Of a stretch of 64,000 nt of DNA, positions 53,661-61,915 are shown in pieces. Numbering within the stretch: the stretch's first letter is position 1; every line of letters starts with the position of its first letter. The stretch comes from Saccostrea cucullata (Eukaryota). The DNA lies in assembly GCF_032062105.1 (NCBI RefSeq), contig NW_026920384.1, forward strand, positions 1 to 64,000, written 5' to 3'. Position numbers and translations under genes: made by a program. The notes under the pieces are model-generated. The model saw only the letters and a program-made list of their open reading frames with translations. It had not been told where the DNA came from and made no database searches.

Positions 53661-54894
53661 ATGAGTGACTCAAAGTTTAAAGGTGAGAACTCCTCTCAGG
53701 TACGAAATACTGGTTTAACGCTTCTACCCGCAGCGGTCAGTGGAGCATTAAGCCACATGTCCGTTATCGACACCAGCCTTCGGGCTATAACGGAAAAGAT
53801 GGACTCTTTTAATACTCTGCAAGAGTCGTTGAATAACATGCAGAAGGATCTGTGGAATGAGGACGGACTAGATGACAGAATTAGATACATCGCTAAACAG
53901 CATGAAGACAACCAGTCATAAATTGAAACTTTAAAACAGGAGAATATTACCCTCCGTAAGGAACTTCAGCTGTTGAAGTCGATTGTTGTGAATTTAGACA
54001 GGAAAGTTACACAACAAGAAAGTGAGATTGTAGACCTGAGAGGAAGATCTATGAGAGATAACATTCTAATCCATAATCTGGCAGAAGAGGAAAACGAGGA
54101 TCTAAATGCAAAAGTTCACCAGATCATAAGAGATCATTTAAAACTGGATATCAGTTTTGTCAGAATCCATCGTAACGGACCTCGAATGCAAGAAAATAAA
54201 CCCAGAACCATTACGGGAAAACTACACGACTCTAAAGATAAGGACCAGATTCTTGCAGCCCAAAGAGCTCTGCGGGAAAAGGAGAAAAAAGAGAACAAGG
54301 AGAAAGGTGTCTTACCTTGCCACATTACACCTCAAACACCAGTGCAAATTAACGAAAGTAGAAGGAGGCTTAAGGAGATCAATACACAGTACAGAATGAA
54401 CAAAATAGAGACTAAAATAATTGGGAATAAAGTTGTGTTTCCCAACGGAAATGTGTGTCGGGAAAAGGTTACCACGCCTAGAGCTGAAGATCTACTCTTT
54501 GTGGACGAGGCAGAAGGAAAAGTTAAACGAGATAGAAGCGGTGACAAGTGATCCTATCTATGAGGGTGGCAATGTCTTCAAAGCAGTGGCAACAAAAGCG
54601 AGTACGTATGCAGAAGTCAGACAGTTTTACAAAAAAAGTTATGAGTGACCGAACTCCGCCAACGCGCACCATTACGTCCTAGCATATCGGATACAAGATG
54701 CACAAGGGAACATCCGCGATGGATACTGCGATGATGGAAAATACGGCGCAGGTAGGAGAGTGGTCCGACTTTTAGGAGATCAGAGTGCCACTAACGTCGC
54801 ATTCGTTATTTCAAGGAAATCGGGAAATCATATCGGACCAAGGCGCTTCGATATCATATGCGATGCCGTGATCAATGCTGCCAATAAACTCTGA
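53661..54894 (+). pseudogene. LINE ORF1 (coiled coil, L1-type RRM, CTD) fused to a C-terminal IMPACT/YigZ (UPF0029) domain; disrupted
   Basis: DLRGRSMRDNILIHNL..EENE...RIHR...KPRTI (L1 ORF1-type), then SDPIYEGGNVFKA...NAHHYVLAYRI...DGYCDDGKYGAGRRVVRLL...NVAFVISRKSGNHIGPRRFDII, stop 54892-54894. Lesions: TAA at 53919, a frameshift near 54510-54520, and TGA at 54646. Confidence 0.8.
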
Positions 54895-55455
54895 ACAGTT
54901 AAAGGAATGAATTATTTAACACCCAATTTTTTTCTGTTATCTTTGGATAATGTCTCTCTAGACTTAATAAGTACTTTACATGTACACATTTTCTTTCTAT
55001 AGGTGTATGAGAAAGCGCTTACGTACATTTATATGCATATACCAGTTTAACTCTTGTATCTGAAAGCAATATACATGTACATTAAGTTTTGATACTGCCT
55101 GTAACAATGCAATATATGTAAGTTCCCCTTTTCTTGTCTTTTTTCGAAATTTAATTGTAATTCTGTATATACATATATTACCATTCTATTAGTAGATAGG
55201 TCTATAGAAAACATAATATTCATCTTTTTGTTTAAAAAAATGGAGTTAAAAATGTTTTAAATTTATTTACCCTATTCCTATTGTCTCCTAAAAGCTACAA
55301 CGTTTTTTTTAATTTGAAAATAGTAAATATTATTTGTTTGTATATCTTTTTTTACGGTTAAAAGGTTCATGCTTGTCGTATGTTTTTTCCGGGAGTGTAT
55401 AGTTTTTACGGACACACTTTAGTTTAATGTTGTAGTAATAATGTCCGGTCAAGAG

Positions 55456-56482
55456 TAGACTGGCCTGCCTGTCTGATATCCGATATACAGACAGGTGATC
55501 AGTAATGTAAAGAGTCCTCTACCGGCCGCGCTCATTGGCTGATAAAAAGTCTCGCTGACGTAGAATTTAAATACCTCGGGGAAACCAAAACAGGTCATAG
55601 AGTGCTATATTATGGATGATTATCGTTACCTCGAGTTTTCTTTGCATAAGAAATTGCATTGTCAGAAATAAATTGTGAAAGATATTCAACATTAAATTTT
55701 CTAAAGCCTTTGAAAGAAAGCTTTGACTAACGATACCGTGGTTGTTTTACCGACGGGCTACGAAAAGAGTTTGATTTACGAGGTGCTGCCTCTTTCCCTC
55801 TTTCCTCTAGTATATTCAGCCACATAGTTTTTCTGACACAAATCATAGAACTCTCGCATTTTTTGTCCAAGTTAATTAATTTTTGAAAACAATTTCTACA
55901 AAGTATTCCGCTTTCAACACTTATATACCATGTATACAGCCATGCTTTTTTTAAAACAGTTCTTTTAGACCAATATCTGTATTTGCTTTTGATTCAATTA
56001 ATCTAACACGGTCACTAATATTTCAACATACAATACATGTACAAATACATGTACATGTATTCCTTCTTTCAGGTGTTTTTTTTCACAGGAGTGTTGAACA
56101 TTTCATTCTAGGCCTATGTACAAGACATTTCACTTCGCTGAATTTATTCTAAATTTTCAGGCGTGATGTAACAGATCAGCAAACCCCTATCACATTGCAT
56201 GGCATACATTAATTGGATAAAATACAACTGCAACAACTCTGCAAACTAGATTTGTTTATTAGAATTGACATATTTTAATTACCGCAGGAAACATACGATA
56301 AATCGGTTTAAAGTTCCCCACTAAGTCAACAGATAGCTTTATTGTGTGATTATTTCCCATGCTGTATCGTAGCAGCAGCACGGCGATAGATGGCGCGTCA
56401 CTCAAGCCAGGAATCCCTGGCTTTAATGGCGGTGATCACCTGTCTTTTCCTGCGTACGCTAAAGACAGGCAATGCCAGTCTA
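55456..56482 (+). mobile_element. Non-autonomous AcademH-like DNA transposon inserted between LINE ORF1 and ORF2
   Basis: TIR tagactggcctgcctgtct / agacaggcaatgccagtcta; 9-bp degenerate TSD GGTCAAGAG (55447-55455) / GGTTAAGAA (56483-56491); RecQ-type helicase motif I remnant DTVVVLPTGYEKSLIYEVLP at 55732-55791. Confidence 0.75.
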
Positions 56483-56668
56483 GGTTAAGAAGGGCACAAA
56501 ATTATTTTTTGTTGATAATTTTTCTCTTCGTTATGACCACATAAGAGGCTACGAAACCTGTTGCTTGTAAATATGTTTCATTTTTGTTTAACTCTATCAG
56601 TTTCCTTCTTCTCTTTCTTACTGCTTTTATTTTTCGGGTTTTGACAATACAAATTTACCACGCGTGTT

Positions 56669-59600
56669 ATGGGGGACCAAGTTGACAATAACCAGTTAAA
56701 AATACTCACAGTAAACTGCCAGGGCCTGGGTGATAAAAACAAAAGAAGAGATGTTTTGAATTACCTCAAAGGTAAAAGGCACAATGTATATTTTCTTCAA
56801 GATACACACTTTACATTTAGTGAAGAAAATTTTTTACAGTCACAATGGGGATATAAGGTCTTTTTTAGTTCATTTAAGTCAAATTCTCGCGGGGTTGCAA
56901 TACTTTTCAATAACAATTGTGAGTTTGAAGTACATAAAACTAGATGACACTGGAAATTTCTTGATTGTAGATCTAACTATTGAGGGTTTAAACTTTTAAT
57001 TGGTAAATATTTATGGTCCAAATTTAGATACACCAATCTTTTATTCAAACCTTTTGAAAAAAAAAATTGAAGATTTTTATTCCTCACAGTATATAATAAT
57101 GGATGGGGATTTTAATTTGATCTTAGATAAAGATTTGGACTCCATGAATTATAAGAACATAAATAACCCAAATGCAAGAGAAGAAGTGTTAAATTTAAAA
57201 GATACTCTGAATCTGATAGATGTCTTTCGCGAAAATAATCCCAAACTTAGACAATTCACATGGAGACGAAAAAATCCAATTAAACAGGCAAGACTTGACT
57301 TCTTCTTTATGTCTGAATCTTTATTGCCCATGATACCTAATATAAAACATGAAAATAGTTATCGCTCTAACCATTCTCCAGTTGTTGCATATTGTAAACT
57401 AAATGAGTTAACAAAAGGAAAAGGTTTCTGGAAATTAAACAATTCTCTGTTAACAGATGGAGACTATGTGGAATTGATTAAGCAAAAGATAACTGAAGTC
57501 AAAAGCCAGTATGCATGTCCAGTTTATAACATGGAAAACTTAGGTACTGTGAGTGATAAAAATTTACAATTTACAATATGTGATAAATTATTTCTAGATA
57601 CTCTGCTAATGAAAATTAGGAGGAAAACAATATCATATTCTTCTTTCAAGAAAAAGAAAATAAAAGAGCGTGAAGCTCAGTTAGAAAAAGAGATATTAGA
57701 ACTGGAACAGAACATAACAGAAAATACTGTAGATAATCTATGAAACAATCAAAAAGAAATTGAAAAAATCAGATTAATAAAATGTAAGGCCAATACATTA
57801 GATCTCGAGTTAAATGGATTGAGGAAGGAGAAAAACCGACAAAATATTTTGCAAGTTTAGAGTCTAGAAATTATATCAGTAAACAAATTCCTAAAATTAT
57901 TAAAGAAGATGGGTGTACGATATCCAATCAAGAGGACATTTTAAATGAAACAAAGATAATTTATGAAAATTTATACAAAACAAGAGAAAATGTAAAAACA
58001 GATGATAGCATTTACAATAGACTAAAAGATTATGATATACCAAGACTAAGTGTGAGGAAATCAGCAAGTTTAGAGGAACCAATAACTAAAGATGAAGTTT
58101 TATATTTCTTAAAAAACATGAAAAATGATAAAAGTCAAGGACCAGATGGATTTACTTGCGAGTGTTTTAAGTTCTTTTGGAAAGATATTGGTATATTTGT
58201 GACAAGGTCAATAAATAGTGCAAATGAATCAATGCAATTTTCAGATGTAAATAGATTAGGAATAATAACTTGTATACCAAAGGCAGGAAAACCAAAAGAA
58301 TTTTAAAAAAAAAATGGCGCCCCATTAGCCTTTTAAATGTTATATATAAATTAGCATCTGGGTGTATAGCTGAACGAATAAAAAAAGTTTTAAATAAATG
58401 AATACATGCAGATCAAACTGGATTTTTAAAAGGAAGATATATTGGAGAAAATATCAGATTGATTTATGACATAATGGATTATACAGAATGCAACCAAATA
58501 CCAGGACTTTTAATGCTTATAGACTTTGAAAAGGCTTTTGATACTACATCGTGGAATTTTATTTATGAAACACTTGATTTTTTTCAATTTTGGAACATCA
58601 ATTAAAAGCTGGATAAAGACTTTTTACAGCAATATAAAGCCCTGTGTCATACATAATGGGTTTATCTCTAATTATATATATCCAGAAAGGGGATGTAGAC
58701 AGGGGGATCCTATATCTCCATACCTCTTCCTATTGTGTGCTGAAATTTTGGGCATTTTAATTCGCAAAAATGAAGATATAAAGGGTATAACAATAGATGG
58801 AGAAGAGTATAAGATTTCTCAGTATGCAGACGACACATCACTTATTTCTGATGGATCGCCTGAATCTATGGATGGAATCCTCAGAGAGAATTAGACTACT
58901 TTGCAAATTTATCAGGGCTCAAAATAAATATTCAAAAAACGAAAATGATATGCATTGGTAGTAAAAAATTTTCAAAAGATGTATATCATCATTCTAGGTG
59001 GAAGTTTGACTTGAATAGCACAACTCTTGATCTTTTAGGGATTAAGTTTTCTGTAAATTTAAAAGACATGATTAATCTTAATTATACATCAAAGTTAAGT
59101 GAAATTAAAAAGGTATTGAATCAGTGGAAACTAAGAAAATTACCCCCCATTGGTAGGTTAACTGTAATTAAGACATTGATTATCCCTAAATTAAATCACC
59201 TGATTCTTACTTTACCTAATCCACCATTAGAAATTATAAAAGTATTTGAGGATGAAATTTATTTTTTTCTTTGGGGAAGTAAAGTCCATAAAATAAAAAG
59301 AAATACTATAATTCAAGACTACAGAGATGGTGGCCTTAGAATTGTTGATTATTCAGAGTTTATAATAGCATTAAAATCAAGTTAGATAAGAATATTAATT
59401 CACTCTGATTCTAAGTGGGTAAAATTATTTCAATCACAATTAAACACAGATATTAAAAATCTTTGGTTAATGGGTACAGACTTTACTGCTAAATTATTTA
59501 AGAAAATAACAAACACTTTTTGGGTAGATGTCCTTAAAAGCTGGCTCAAAATATGCTTTGCAGAACAAGAGAAAAATAAAAAGATATTCCATGAACACAT

Positions 59601-60490
59601 ATCGTATAATCCAAAAATAATCATGGTTGGGTCTTCTGTCTTTCTTAAAAGCTACTTTAATGCTGGTTTTGTTTTTATAAGTTACTTGTTCAACTTAGAT
59701 AATAATTTCTTAAGTTTAGACGCTTTTAAAGACCTTGGTGTAAAAGCAAATTTTGTTGAATTTTCTGGTTTGAAACAGGCTGTGTGTGATAGATTTGTTA
59801 GCAAAAACCAAATGAATATATTTCTTTCTTATGGTCCAAATTTACCCAGTTCTTTGAAGATGTTTTACATTAATATGAAAGGCTGTAAAGACATGTATGA
59901 CATTCTTATTAAAAGAAAGAAAGAAACAAGTACTTCCATTTTAAAATGGAATGAAAAGGGATATCTATTCACCATGCAAGAATGGAGTAAAATTTTTGAA
60001 CTCCCATTTAAAATTACACAAGAATCTAAACTGCAATGGCTACAATTTCAAATTTTACATAGAATAGTTCCTACAAATTTATATCTTTTTAAACTTAAGA
60101 TAAAAGAATCTCCAGCATGCTGTTTCTGTAAGACTGACATTGAGTCAATTGAACATCTTTTTGTTGAATGTAATTTAGTAAAAGAGCTTTGGAGTGATAT
60201 TGAAGAATGGTTTTCATGTAAGTTTAATATATCTGTAATTTTTGACAGAACAACGATATTATTTGGCAAACATAAGAATAAGGATGTCCATAAAGTGCAA
60301 AATTTGATGACCCTGATAATTAAGAATTATATTTTTTCGACTAAATATAAAAATCCTTCTGTTCTAAGTATAATGACTTTAAAAACAATTATTGTGGAAA
60401 GATTCTTGATTGAGAAATTTTTACTTTTGAAACACTGAAAATATACAGAGTATGAGAATAACTGGCAGAGCATCTGTGATATGATATGAT
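56669..60490 (+). pseudogene. LINE ORF2 (APE endonuclease, RT, zf-RVT) with multiple frameshifts and stops
   Basis: LTVNCQGL, FLQDTH, NIYGPN, GDFN, RLDFF, SNHSPV, RGCRQGDPISPYLF, QYADD, CCFC...ESIEHLFVEC spread over several ORF fragments. Confidence 0.9.
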
Positions 60491-60873
60491 TCATATGTAC
60501 AAGTCTACATATACATATGTATTTAAGAATTTTTTCAAGAAACAAAATCTTAATCTTAACACACCCCCCTTAATGTAAAGAAAAAAACCAACACTATGCC
60601 CCCTATATTTCTTTTGTTTTTGATTTTCTCTTTTTAATGTTCTTTTCTCTCTCCCTCTTTCTTCTTCTCCTCCTTTATCTATCCTATATTCAAACAACTT
60701 TCACATGTGTTTAATTTAATGTGAACTTGTGGATGTCTTTCTGTAAATTTAATACTTGTATACTTGTCTATAATAGATACTTGAAGGAAGATATATTTGT
60801 GAACATACTTTTGTAGATACTTGTAAGATATAAAAGTGAAAATTAAATAAAATAAATAAATAAATAAAAAAAA

Positions 60874-61915
60874 ACTATATGGAAAAATACCTGAACTGTC
60901 TGATGTCGACTTTGCTAACTACATAAAAAATAATTGGAAACGTTACCTAGACGACTGCTTCATATTTTGGACCAGGAGTGAAGAAGACTTAACTAAATTC
61001 CATTCACTTCTTAGTAACCTCCATGATTCCATACAATTTACGATAGAAAAAAGTCGTACGAACTTCCATTTTTAGATCTTCTTATTATAAAGAATGGATC
61101 GTATATAACTACAAACTTGTACTGTTAACCTACGGACACGCACCAATATTTGGATTTTAGATTGTGCCACCCATCCCACACAAAACGTAATTTTCCGTTT
61201 AATTTAGCAGGAAGAATTTGTATAATTATTACAGATCAAAACCTACGATGTAGACGTTTGGAAGAATTCAAAATATATTTAAGACGACAAAATTATCCGA
61301 TGGATCTAATAAACATTGGAATAGAAAAGGCATCCGAAATTCCAATAGAGGACCTGAGAAATCCACGCCATATAGACGACACCAATAATGACGGGAAAAT
61401 AGCCTTTGTAGTTACCCATAATCCAAGGAACAGAAACATCCTTATGGACGCTAAAAGATTTTATCCCATTTTAGAACAATCGGAAAACATGAAAAGTTTG
61501 GTTCAACCAAATGATATCATAAACAGTCGACGACAAGCACCAAATCTTAAAAAACTACACAGGAGGAAATTCCAACCATTAAAAAATGCGGAGATCCGAG
61601 ATGCGGAACGTGTACATATTTAGAAGAGGGGAATACAATCCAACTTAAATCAGGAATGGAATTTCGAACCAACTCATCTATGAACTGTAAATCGCAAAAC
61701 GTCATCTACTGTGCCATCTGTCTGACGTTTCAAGAATATTATATTGGAAAAACGGGAAAACTAAATGCCAGGGTTCGTGTGCACAAACAACAAATCAAAG
61801 ACCCTAGTGTGCGTAATACACCGTGTTGTGAACATTTCGCAAAATGTGGCAAAGGAATATTTAAGATTTTCCCTTTTTATAAACTCCCAAATGAAAACGA
61901 AAATTTACTTTTAAC
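60874..61915 (+). mobile_element. Decayed Penelope-like element with C-terminal GIY-YIG endonuclease (canonical domain order)
   Basis: WKRYLDDCFIFW, IQFT, PFLD, PTDTHQYL...CHPSH, then NCKSQNVIY...YIGKT...R.R.H...EHF. Confidence 0.85.

What the first reader, a model, noticed from the sequence alone, without database searches (positions are those of the whole stretch)
53661..54894. L1/Tx1 retrotransposon ORF1 ends in an IMPACT/YigZ (UPF0029) domain, missed by the ORF track
Seen: after the L1-type coiled coil and RRM, 54541-54894 translates to SDPIYEGGNVFKA...AHHYVLAYRI...DGYCDDGKYGAGRRVVRLL...NVAFVISR...HIGPRRFDII. Known: this follows the IMPACT/Yih1/YigZ ancient-domain signature (ATHN..AYRI...DDGE..AG..LL...NV.VVVSR..GG..LGP.RF..I); host IMPACT has an RWD domain instead and dampens GCN2/eIF2-alpha signalling. 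Inference: a LINE lineage captured this domain as an ORF1 accessory module, either for nucleic-acid binding in the RNP or to modulate translational stress defence. I am not aware of it being described as an ORF1 accessory domain.
Basis: partly seen in the sequence, partly recalled or inferred. Interest (0 to 1): 0.8.

Follow-up and report, generated by a model that had tools for sequence, protein, structure and literature searches.

The report
Oyster LINE ORF1 carries IMPACT domain
A family of L1-like jumping genes in an oyster genome has permanently added the 'ancient' domain of the translation regulator IMPACT, whose function is unknown, to the end of its RNA-packaging protein; the copy in this window is a broken member of that family.

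Summary
Window 54649-54891 matches Pfam UPF0029 (E 2.5e-10, above the cut-off). It lies at the 3' end of a decayed LINE ORF1 (one stop, three small indels).

Other copies in the same genome (Saccostrea cucullata, by contig match) have one open 411-aa ORF1. It reads coiled coil, RRM, CTD, then IMPACT domain. About 730 nt downstream lies an L1-type ORF2 (APE, RT, zf-RVT), followed by a poly(A) tail and target-site duplications.

- **Fold:** the predicted structure matches human L1 ORF1p and Yih1/YigZ.
- **Spread:** the genome holds at least 149 UPF0029 matches in several LINE families. The same architecture occurs in Ostrea, Crassostrea, Pinctada and Tegillarca. 666 clusters (50% identity) match the whole-ORF1 profile at E<=1e-30.
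- **Constraint:** the domain keeps the UPF0029 signature residues, is the most conserved ORF1 segment, and shows dN/dS of about 0-0.4.
- **Origin:** it resembles eukaryotic IMPACT (100 bits) far more than bacterial YigZ (29-36 bits). It lacks the RWD domain, so a GCN1/GCN2 route is unlikely.

Its function is inferred only. I found no published description, though earlier notes of this scan reported the same thing elsewhere in this genome. I rate it a new variant of a known kind.

The parts
53565..53572 (+). 5' target-site duplication (CTATATGG), followed by 13 unmatched nt
   Evidence: The same 8-mer directly follows the poly(A) tail at 60875-60882.
53586..53660 (+). Remnant of the 5' UTR; this copy lacks about 98 nt of the family's 5' end
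   Evidence: Homology with other copies starts at 53586. Other copies share a further 98 nt upstream.
53661..54894 (+). ORF1, decayed: one stop, a 2-bp deletion, a 1-bp insertion and a 1-bp deletion
   Evidence: Open 411-aa versions occur in L004 and L005.
53730..54032 (+). Coiled-coil region of ORF1 (residues about 24-124)
   Evidence: AF2 model helices 24-65 and 70-124. Foldseek matches the human L1 ORF1p trimer 2yko/2ykp.
54048..54455 (+). RRM (residues about 130-212) and CTD (about 221-265) of ORF1
   Evidence: The AF2 secondary structure is beta-alpha-beta-beta-alpha, followed by the CTD. Foldseek: 2yko E 2.3e-6, 2ldy RRM-CTD 6.6e-4, 2w7a.
54541..54894 (+). IMPACT/UPF0029 'ancient' domain, the C-terminal end of ORF1 including the stop
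   Evidence: Pfam PF01205 E 2.5e-10 for the window piece and 1.4e-13 for an open copy. PDB 6bqi Yih1 by sequence, E 8.8e-9, and by fold, 2.7e-7.
54895..56668 (+). Spacer between the ORFs (about 730 nt in other copies), interrupted here
   Evidence: Other copies pass from 55449 to 56516 with only 56 nt between.
55455..56482 (+). Nested insertion of an unrelated interspersed repeat of about 1.03 kb
   Evidence: It is absent from other copies of the LINE. At least 40 further matches occur elsewhere in the genome.
56669..60438 (+). ORF2, decayed into at least 6 frames: APE endonuclease, reverse transcriptase, zf-RVT
   Evidence: Pfam hits on the pieces. The open 1272-aa version in L026 carries Exo_endo_phos, RVT_1 and zf-RVT. 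It matches human L1 ORF2p at E 7.7e-96 over its whole length.
60439..60874 (+). 3' UTR and A-rich/poly(A) tail
   Evidence: Homology with other copies ends at 60874-60878. All copies end in A-runs followed by different flanks.
60875..60882 (+). 3' target-site duplication (CTATATGG)

Best explanation
Window 53586-60874 is a decayed, slightly 5'-truncated copy of an L1-superfamily (L1/Tx1) LINE of the oyster Saccostrea. Its ORF1 protein is a normal type II ORF1p (coiled coil, RRM, CTD) with one extra C-terminal domain: the UPF0029 'ancient' domain of the eukaryotic protein IMPACT.

Shown:
- The fusion is in one frame in open copies.
- It is linked to ORF2 across many families and several bivalve genera.
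- It keeps the UPF0029 signature residues.
- It is as conserved as the RNA-binding core.

Inferred:
- An ancestor LINE captured the 3' part of a host IMPACT coding sequence. The element's version is intronless, whereas the host gene has an intron inside the domain.
- The module has been kept because it is needed for retrotransposition.

Most likely mode of action (inference, about 0.35): the coiled coil should make a trimer, as in L1, which would present three copies of the domain on the RNA-bound ORF1p. The domain uses its conserved loop face to bind the same universally conserved partner as cellular IMPACT/YigZ. That partner is plausibly part of the translation machinery. Binding would couple ORF1p to the ribosome that translates the LINE RNA, which would favour binding of its own RNA (cis-preference) or translation of ORF2 across the 730-nt spacer. 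It cannot act through the known GCN1-competition route, because it has no RWD domain.
For: - **Domain identity:** Pfam UPF0029 above the cut-off. Yih1 6bqi by sequence and by fold, together with YigZ 1vi7 and TT1547 2cve.
- **ORF1p core:** Foldseek matches human L1 ORF1p 2yko/2ykp/2ykq/2ldy. The AF2 model has mean pLDDT 81.
- **One frame:** open 411-aa ORFs in L004 and L005.
- **Linkage in this family:** at least 10 copies cover the whole ORF1, and 6 continue into ORF2. L026 has both ORFs open.
- **Linkage in other families:** other families of this genome have the APE start 720-790 nt after ORF1. The same holds for Pinctada L031 and the unnamed contig L064.
- **Family size:** at least 149 UPF0029 matches in this genome. 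666 50%-identity clusters match at E<=1e-30. Of 143 new representatives, 135 carry the domain. The domain is C-terminal in 212 of 251 proteins.
- **Constraint:** the invariant or near-invariant residues are H, YR, DDGE.GAG, R and G..RF. Mean pairwise identity is 0.32 for IMPACT, 0.30 for the RRM, 0.27 for the CTD and 0.18 for the coiled coil. Divergence of the domain tracks that of RRM+CTD (r 0.55; 0 of 999 permutations reach it). dN/dS of the IMPACT part is 0.00-0.41 in pairs with dS>=0.1.
- **Eukaryotic origin:** the profile of the element's domains scores 100 bits on Yih1 against 36 and 29 bits on the bacterial proteins, which also have a 2-residue insertion in the DDGE motif. Identity to a protein with RWD plus UPF0029 is 35-38%.
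- **Host gene:** the domain of the host gene is split by an intron.
Against: - No experiment or computation here addresses what the domain binds.
- The function of the ancient domain is itself unknown (PMC7140605, PMC4503747).
- The mildly basic pI (median 8.7) is the same as in a host-type domain, so it does not discriminate between roles.
- dN/dS between dispersed copies mixes selection on active lineages with neutral decay after insertion.
- RNA support is weak. Oligo-dT RNA-seq depth is only about 1-5x, on both strands, with no reads on the spacer. Contigs from RNA libraries may contain DNA.
- Pfam Transposase_22 does not hit the core by sequence.
- A single capture is assumed, not tested with an ORF2 tree.
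Confidence: 0.85

Rival explanations
1. The domain is an extra nucleic-acid-binding or chaperone surface of the ORF1p RNP. It acts directly on the LINE RNA or on the DNA target, not on a host protein or the ribosome.
For: The YigZ/IMPACT fold has been proposed to bind conserved molecules through its invariant loops (PMC4503747). The domain is mildly basic. It sits right after the RNA-binding RRM-CTD.
Against: The pI is no higher than in a host-type domain and is lower than that of RRM+CTD, 9.5. No nucleic-acid-binding data exist for UPF0029. Type II ORF1p already has a complete RNA-binding unit.
Confidence: 0.25
2. The domain mimics or competes with host IMPACT to damp GCN2/eIF2-alpha stress signalling or another IMPACT-dependent pathway (actin, CDK). 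That would keep translation permissive for the element.
For: The domain derives from eukaryotic IMPACT. IMPACT/Yih1 inhibits GCN2 (PMC7140605, PMC6550387). The Yih1 fragment 133-258 still binds Cdc28 (PMC4503747).
Against: GCN1 competition needs the RWD domain (PMC7140605). No RWD is detectable in ORF1. The residues kept are those shared with bacteria, which have no GCN2.
Confidence: 0.1
3. Chance event or neutral passenger: a processed IMPACT pseudogene landed next to a LINE ORF1 and is carried along without function.
For: The window copy alone is broken and out of frame.
Against: The fusion is in frame in open copies. It is present in many families and genera. It is the best-conserved ORF1 segment and keeps the family signature. 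dN/dS is low.
Confidence: 0.02
4. These are host genes (an expanded IMPACT-like gene family) and not transposon proteins. The link with ORF2 is incidental.
For: NCBI and UniProt annotate them as 'protein IMPACT homolog' or 'IMPACT-like protein'. One Ostrea edulis locus has the ORF1 without an ORF2 within 8 kb.
Against: The 5' and 3' ends are shared, and copies carry a poly(A) tail, target-site duplications and different flanks. ORF2 lies at a fixed distance in several families and species. There are dozens to hundreds of copies.
Confidence: 0.03

Closest known systems
Type II ORF1p of L1 elements (coiled coil, RRM, CTD; human L1 ORF1p, PDB 2yko/2ykp; Khazina & Weichenrieder classification as summarised in PMC4120745)
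   Same: The order of coiled coil, single RRM and CTD is the same. The fold matches at Foldseek E 2e-6 over about 200-230 columns. It is encoded upstream of an APE-RT ORF2 that aligns with human L1 ORF2p over its full length.
   Different: An additional domain of about 115 residues follows the CTD. Sequence similarity is too low for Pfam Transposase_22. The spacer between the ORFs is long, about 730 nt.
Eukaryotic IMPACT / yeast Yih1 (RWD plus ancient domain; PDB 6bqi)
   Same: The ancient domain is homologous (profile 100 bits, E 7e-28), C-terminal, and has the same signature motifs without the bacterial insertion.
   Different: There is no RWD domain or linker, so the GCN1-competition mechanism is not available. 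It is fused to an RNA-binding, presumably trimeric transposon protein, is multicopy, and is intronless, whereas the host gene has an intron in the domain.
Bacterial YigZ / TTHA1053 (UPF0029 plus DUF1949; PDB 1vi7, 2cve)
   Same: The N-terminal domain has the same fold (Foldseek E 1e-4; rmsd 2.3 A over 122 columns for 2cve). The invariant residues are shared.
   Different: Sequence similarity is much weaker (29-36 bits). There is no DUF1949 domain. The bacterial proteins have two extra residues in the DDGE..AG motif.
LINE ORF1s with accessory domains: esterase (type IV) and PHD (type III and variants) in CR1/L2 elements (PMC4120745)
   Same: The principle is the same: a host-derived globular domain shuffled into ORF1 and kept in a whole lineage.
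   Different: The domain is different (UPF0029), the LINE superfamily is different (L1/Tx1) and so are the hosts (bivalve molluscs). It is not among the five ORF1 types listed there.

Membership tests
UPF0029 / IMPACT ancient domain (Pfam PF01205) | Profile match above the curated cut-off (27 bits) | tested here: met
   40.7 bits for the window piece, 51.2 bits for an open copy, and up to 79.9 bits in sister families.
UPF0029 / IMPACT ancient domain (Pfam PF01205) | Signature residues: H-N..A-Y-R, D-D-G-E..A-G, R..G-G..L-G..R-F | tested here: met
   They are invariant or nearly invariant in alignments A1, A2 and A3. In this particular family GG is reduced to G-N.
UPF0029 / IMPACT ancient domain (Pfam PF01205) | YigZ N-terminal-domain fold | tested here: met
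   Foldseek: 6bqi 2.7e-7, 1vi7 9.8e-5, 2cve 1.2e-4. pLDDT of the domain is about 88-95.
IMPACT/Yih1 orthologues (GCN2 regulators) | N-terminal RWD domain that binds GCN1 | tested here: not met
   No PF05773 hit at E<=1. The N-terminus is coiled coil, RRM and CTD.
Bacterial YigZ | C-terminal DUF1949 domain after UPF0029 | tested here: not met
   ORF1 ends within 9 residues of the domain in 212 of 251 family proteins. There is no Pfam hit.
Type II (L1-like) ORF1p | Coiled coil followed by one RRM and a CTD | tested here: met
   AF2 secondary structure. Foldseek matches the human ORF1p trimer and 2ldy RRM-CTD.
Type II (L1-like) ORF1p | Sequence membership in Pfam Transposase_22 (PF02994 and related) | tested here: not met
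   No hit at E<=1. The relation is seen only by fold.
Type II (L1-like) ORF1p | Trimer formation through the coiled coil | not tested
   No complex prediction was run. This is inferred from the 100-residue helix and the match to the 2yko trimer chains.
L1 superfamily LINE (L1/Tx1) | ORF2 with N-terminal APE endonuclease, RT and a C-terminal zinc-binding domain | tested here: met
   Pfam Exo_endo_phos, RVT_1 and zf-RVT. Human L1 ORF2p matches at E 7.7e-96 over residues 8-1204.
L1 superfamily LINE (L1/Tx1) | Poly(A) tail and target-site duplication | tested here: met
   Copies end in A-runs, followed by unrelated flanks in the five copies whose 3' ends were read, the window copy included. The window copy has an 8-bp duplication.
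Tx1 clade specifically | Placement in an RT phylogeny with reference elements; sequence-specific insertion in many Tx1 members | not testable with these tools
   No Repbase or Dfam references were on hand. The different flanks show no obvious target specificity. Bivalve L1-superfamily LINEs are reported as Tx1 or L1-Tx1 in PMC10294476.

The most novel reading that the evidence does not exclude
The IMPACT ancient domain is a ribosome- or translation-machinery-binding module that this LINE lineage uses to hold its ORF1p on the ribosome translating its own RNA. That would enforce cis-preference or ORF2 translation. If so, these elements are a natural gain-of-function experiment that reveals the long-unknown function of a domain conserved from bacteria to humans.
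Probability: 0.25. Interest if true: 0.8.

Novelty: new variant of a known kind. Interest (0 to 1): 0.6.

Why it matters
LINE ORF1 proteins are classified into five types built from RRM, CCHC, coiled coil, CTD, PHD and esterase domains (PMC4120745). A UPF0029 domain is not among them. Here it is fixed in a large lineage that shows signs of recent activity: hundreds of sequence clusters, many open copies, and the best-conserved part of the protein.

Two things follow:
- It widens the known repertoire of host domains recruited by non-LTR retrotransposons, this time in the L1 superfamily and in molluscs.
- The ancient domain of IMPACT/YigZ is universally conserved, yet its function is unknown. 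A transposon that needs it, detached from the RWD domain and from GCN2 regulation, offers an independent and experimentally tractable context in which to find its ligand.

There is also a practical point. Gene annotations of oysters call these transposon proteins 'protein IMPACT homolog' or 'IMPACT-like', which inflates the apparent IMPACT gene family.

Tried and rejected
- **Word search restricted to the domain:** only 6 hits. It was too insensitive to find host IMPACT.
- **The search for related loci with the domain alignment on bacterial genomes:** No YigZ sequences were obtained, so no UPF0029 tree was built. Origin rests on profile scores against PDB chains and on one protein with RWD plus UPF0029.
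- **The fetch from genomes for sister families and the host gene:** I used the 1.5-kb flanks of search loci instead.
- **Taxonomy of the divergent clades:** two cluster-member runs and the third word search returned almost only unnamed ENA, JGI and Logan proteins. The range outside pteriomorph bivalves is therefore unknown. The Atlas says 'commonest Mollusca'.
- **Literature:** eight searches and six papers gave no report of UPF0029 in a transposon. Repbase and Dfam could not be consulted.
- **RNA reads:** low coverage, not decisive.
- **pI comparison:** uninformative.
- no complex prediction was run. The two host IMPACT exons were read separately and were not joined.

Full report
**Observation**

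Window 54541-54894 reads through the quoted motifs. The piece 54649-54891 matches Pfam UPF0029 at E 2.5e-10, 40.7 bits against a cut-off of 27.

Upstream, 53661-54548 encodes a long helical region and an RRM-like segment in the neighbouring frame. In this copy the reading frame is interrupted by:
- a TAA stop at 53919;
- a 2-bp deletion near 54515;
- a 1-bp insertion near 54633;
- a 1-bp deletion near 54651.

These are judged against open copies.

**The element**

A DNA search of the window's own genome (1.17 Gb, 23,869 contigs) found at least 10 further copies covering the whole 1.26 kb at 91-96% identity.

Homology with them begins at 53586 and runs to 55449. It skips 55450-56515, where other copies have 56 nt, and continues through ORF2 to 60874. 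The skipped part is a nested copy of another repeat.

Other copies share a further 98 nt at the 5' end. All end in A-runs followed by unrelated flanks. The window copy is flanked by an 8-bp duplication, CTATATGG.

A full element is about 6.4 kb:
- a 5' UTR of about 173 nt;
- ORF1 of 411 aa;
- a spacer of about 730 nt;
- ORF2 of 1272 aa;
- a 3' UTR and poly(A) tail.

L004 and L005 have an open ORF1. L026 has both ORFs open.

ORF2 carries Exo_endo_phos, RVT_1 and zf-RVT. It aligns with human L1 ORF2p over residues 8-1204 at E 7.7e-96, far better than with R2 proteins. So this is an L1-superfamily LINE. I could not separate Tx1 from L1 proper. Bivalve elements of this superfamily are reported as Tx1 or L1-Tx1 (PMC10294476).

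P0002, annotated from Saccostrea cucullata, is 98% identical. It lies on a contig of 107,319 bp, the length of contig C12111 of this genome. The genome is therefore that species.

**ORF1 anatomy**

In the open copy, UPF0029 occupies residues 306-404 (E 1.4e-13). Yih1 (PDB 6bqi) matches residues 295-401 at E 8.8e-9.

An AlphaFold model built on 22 homologues has mean pLDDT 81. It shows:
- helices at 24-124;
- an RRM-like beta-alpha-beta-beta-alpha unit at 134-210;
- a small alpha/beta CTD at 221-260;
- a compact alpha/beta domain at 300-410 with pLDDT of about 88-95.

Foldseek against the PDB gives two sets of hits:
- the ancient-domain structures: Yih1 6bqi (2.7e-7), YigZ 1vi7 (1e-4) and TT1547 2cve (1e-4; rmsd 2.3 A);
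- the human L1 ORF1p trimer 2yko/2ykp/2ykq (2e-6 to 9e-5), the RRM-CTD structure 2ldy and the RRM structure 2w7a.

The protein is thus a type II ORF1p with an extra C-terminal IMPACT domain. Pfam Transposase_22 does not detect the core by sequence. No RWD or DUF1949 domain is present.

**How general the fusion is**

A scan of the genome with PF01205 gave at least 149 matches. This is a lower bound, because only 150 candidates were scored. Many lie in open frames of 396-482 aa that belong to several distinct families.

In those families the start of an APE endonuclease 60-69% identical to this family's ORF2 lies 720-790 nt after the ORF1 stop. The single intron-containing host IMPACT gene is on contig C1292.

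Proteins with the same architecture, 38-84% identical, are annotated in Saccostrea echinata, Ostrea edulis, Crassostrea virginica, C. gigas, C. angulata, Pinctada imbricata and Tegillarca granosa. They are named 'uncharacterized', 'protein IMPACT homolog' or 'IMPACT-like'.

The Pinctada locus has a decayed ORF2, homologous over its full length, about 600 nt downstream. A divergent 619-aa member on an unnamed ENA contig is followed after 358 nt by an open 1270-aa APE-RT-zfRVT gene.

A profile search of 1.84 billion cluster representatives gave 666 clusters at E<=1e-30. Of 143 new representatives among the best 150, 135 carry the domain. The 8 without it are 179-377 aa and may be fragments.

The domain ends within 9 residues of the C-terminus in 212 of 251 proteins. 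The Atlas clusters with this architecture are 'commonest Mollusca'. The taxa of most divergent members are unknown.

**Constraint**

Across 22 close and 31 distant members, the invariant or nearly invariant positions of the domain are exactly the UPF0029 signature: H, Y-R, D-D-G-E, G-A-G, R, G and R-F.

Over 139 full-length proteins the mean pairwise identities are:

| ORF1 segment | Mean pairwise identity |
|---|---|
| IMPACT domain | 0.32 |
| RRM | 0.30 |
| CTD | 0.27 |
| Coiled coil | 0.18 |

Divergence of the domain tracks that of RRM+CTD (r 0.55; 0 of 999 label permutations reach it). This fits co-inheritance, not repeated swapping.

Between the open copy and six copies with dS>=0.1, Nei-Gojobori dN/dS is 0.00-0.41 for the domain and 0.11-0.23 for the whole ORF1. 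This holds even though post-insertion decay pushes the ratio towards 1.

**Origin**

A profile of 20 of the element's domains scores 100.2 bits (E 7e-28) on fungal Yih1. It scores only 35.7 bits on Thermus TTHA1053 and 29.4 bits on E. coli YigZ. Both bacterial proteins also have two extra residues inside the DDGE..AG motif.

A protein with RWD plus UPF0029 (P0290) is 35-38% identical to the element's domains. The same protein is 63% identical to one exon of the oyster's host gene.

The host gene has an intron between the DDGE-containing exon and the RW-GG-RF exon. I read the two exons separately and did not join them. The element's version is continuous.

The domain therefore comes from eukaryotic IMPACT, probably through a spliced RNA. 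The donor lineage and the date are not resolved.

**Mechanism**

Shown:
- architecture;
- linkage to ORF2;
- conservation.

Inferred:
- ORF1p trimerises through its coiled coil, as L1 ORF1p does, and so displays three ancient domains on the RNP.
- The residues kept are those shared with bacteria, so the domain most likely binds the same universal partner as cellular UPF0029 proteins.

The function of that domain is still unknown (PMC7140605). Its invariant residues cluster on one face (PMC4503747), and Yih1 associates with ribosomes (PMC4503747).

My preferred reading, at about 0.35, is coupling of ORF1p to the translating ribosome. This would help cis-preference or translation of ORF2 across the long spacer. 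A direct nucleic-acid role (about 0.25) is the main rival.

**Expression**

Two oligo-dT RNA-seq runs labelled with the same species gave about 1-5x depth over ORF1, including the IMPACT part, and over ORF2. Most reads were 95-99% alike, they lay on both strands, and none fell on the first 600 nt of the spacer.

One contig from a metatranscriptome library bridges the CTD-IMPACT junction (L027 880-1340). Such libraries can contain DNA. This is compatible with low-level transcription of related copies but proves little.

**Novelty**

Full-text searches for UPF0029, Impact_N, YigZ or IMPACT together with ORF1, LINE or retrotransposon terms found nothing. Four papers were also checked:
- a survey of L1 ORF1 diversity (PMC5203782);
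- bivalve LINE diversity (PMC10294476);
- gastropod LINE diversity (PMC11203168);
- the ORF1 classification (PMC4120745).

None of these four mentions the domain in a transposon.

Repbase and Dfam could not be checked. Their oyster L1-Tx1 consensus sequences probably contain the ORF.

Earlier notes of this scan (s1-700994, s1-730918) report the same fusion on other pieces of this genome. I reached the same reading independently.

**Verdict:** real, ordinary as a broken copy, but representative of a large family with an undescribed ORF1 accessory domain. It is a new variant of a known kind.

Noticed in passing
window 51916-53091 (+): The C-terminal part of a reverse transcriptase (RVT_1, E 4e-18) from a different LINE lies just upstream. 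The IMPACT-bearing element sits about 470 nt after it.
   Followed up: partly
window 55455-56482: A nested repeat of about 1.03 kb inside the spacer between the ORFs, with at least 40 other matches in the genome at 80-95% identity. At some loci its first 350 nt occur in both orientations close together, which suggests a larger element with inverted ends.
   Followed up: partly
L002 = G000:C19598:32909-37170: A second locus matches the window over the LINE, its flanks and the nested insertion at about 96% identity. It is a segmental duplication or an uncollapsed haplotype.
   Followed up: no
L032 (Ostrea edulis OX387706.1), 8001-9960: An open 406-aa ORF1-IMPACT is followed by about 720 nt and then an A-rich tail. 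No ORF2 homology lies within 8 kb. This may be an ORF1-only (HAL1-like) retrocopy, or a transcript polyadenylated at the end of the spacer.
   Followed up: partly
L069 = G000:C1292:493030-496167 (-): The host IMPACT gene. Its ancient domain is split by an intron between the DDGE exon and the RW-GG-RF exon. It appears to be the only intron-containing UPF0029 locus among at least 149 matches.
   Followed up: partly
P0144, P0113, P0075 and about 25 other family proteins: Some divergent family members carry 60-156 further residues after the IMPACT domain. Their nature was not examined.
   Followed up: no
ESM Atlas fold search, rows 4, 8 and 9: A 419-aa cluster in which all members carry a NADAR domain aligns with ORF1 residues 80-378. 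Arthropod clusters with Baculo_FP_2nd, with or without PHD, align with the coiled-coil/RRM part. These may be other L1-like ORF1 proteins with accessory domains.
   Followed up: no
L027:1509-2108 (equivalent to window about 54890-55450): No RNA-seq read at >=95% identity falls on the first 600 nt of the spacer, although ORF1 and ORF2 are covered. Either the spacer diverges faster between expressed copies or the transcripts are not continuous.
   Followed up: no
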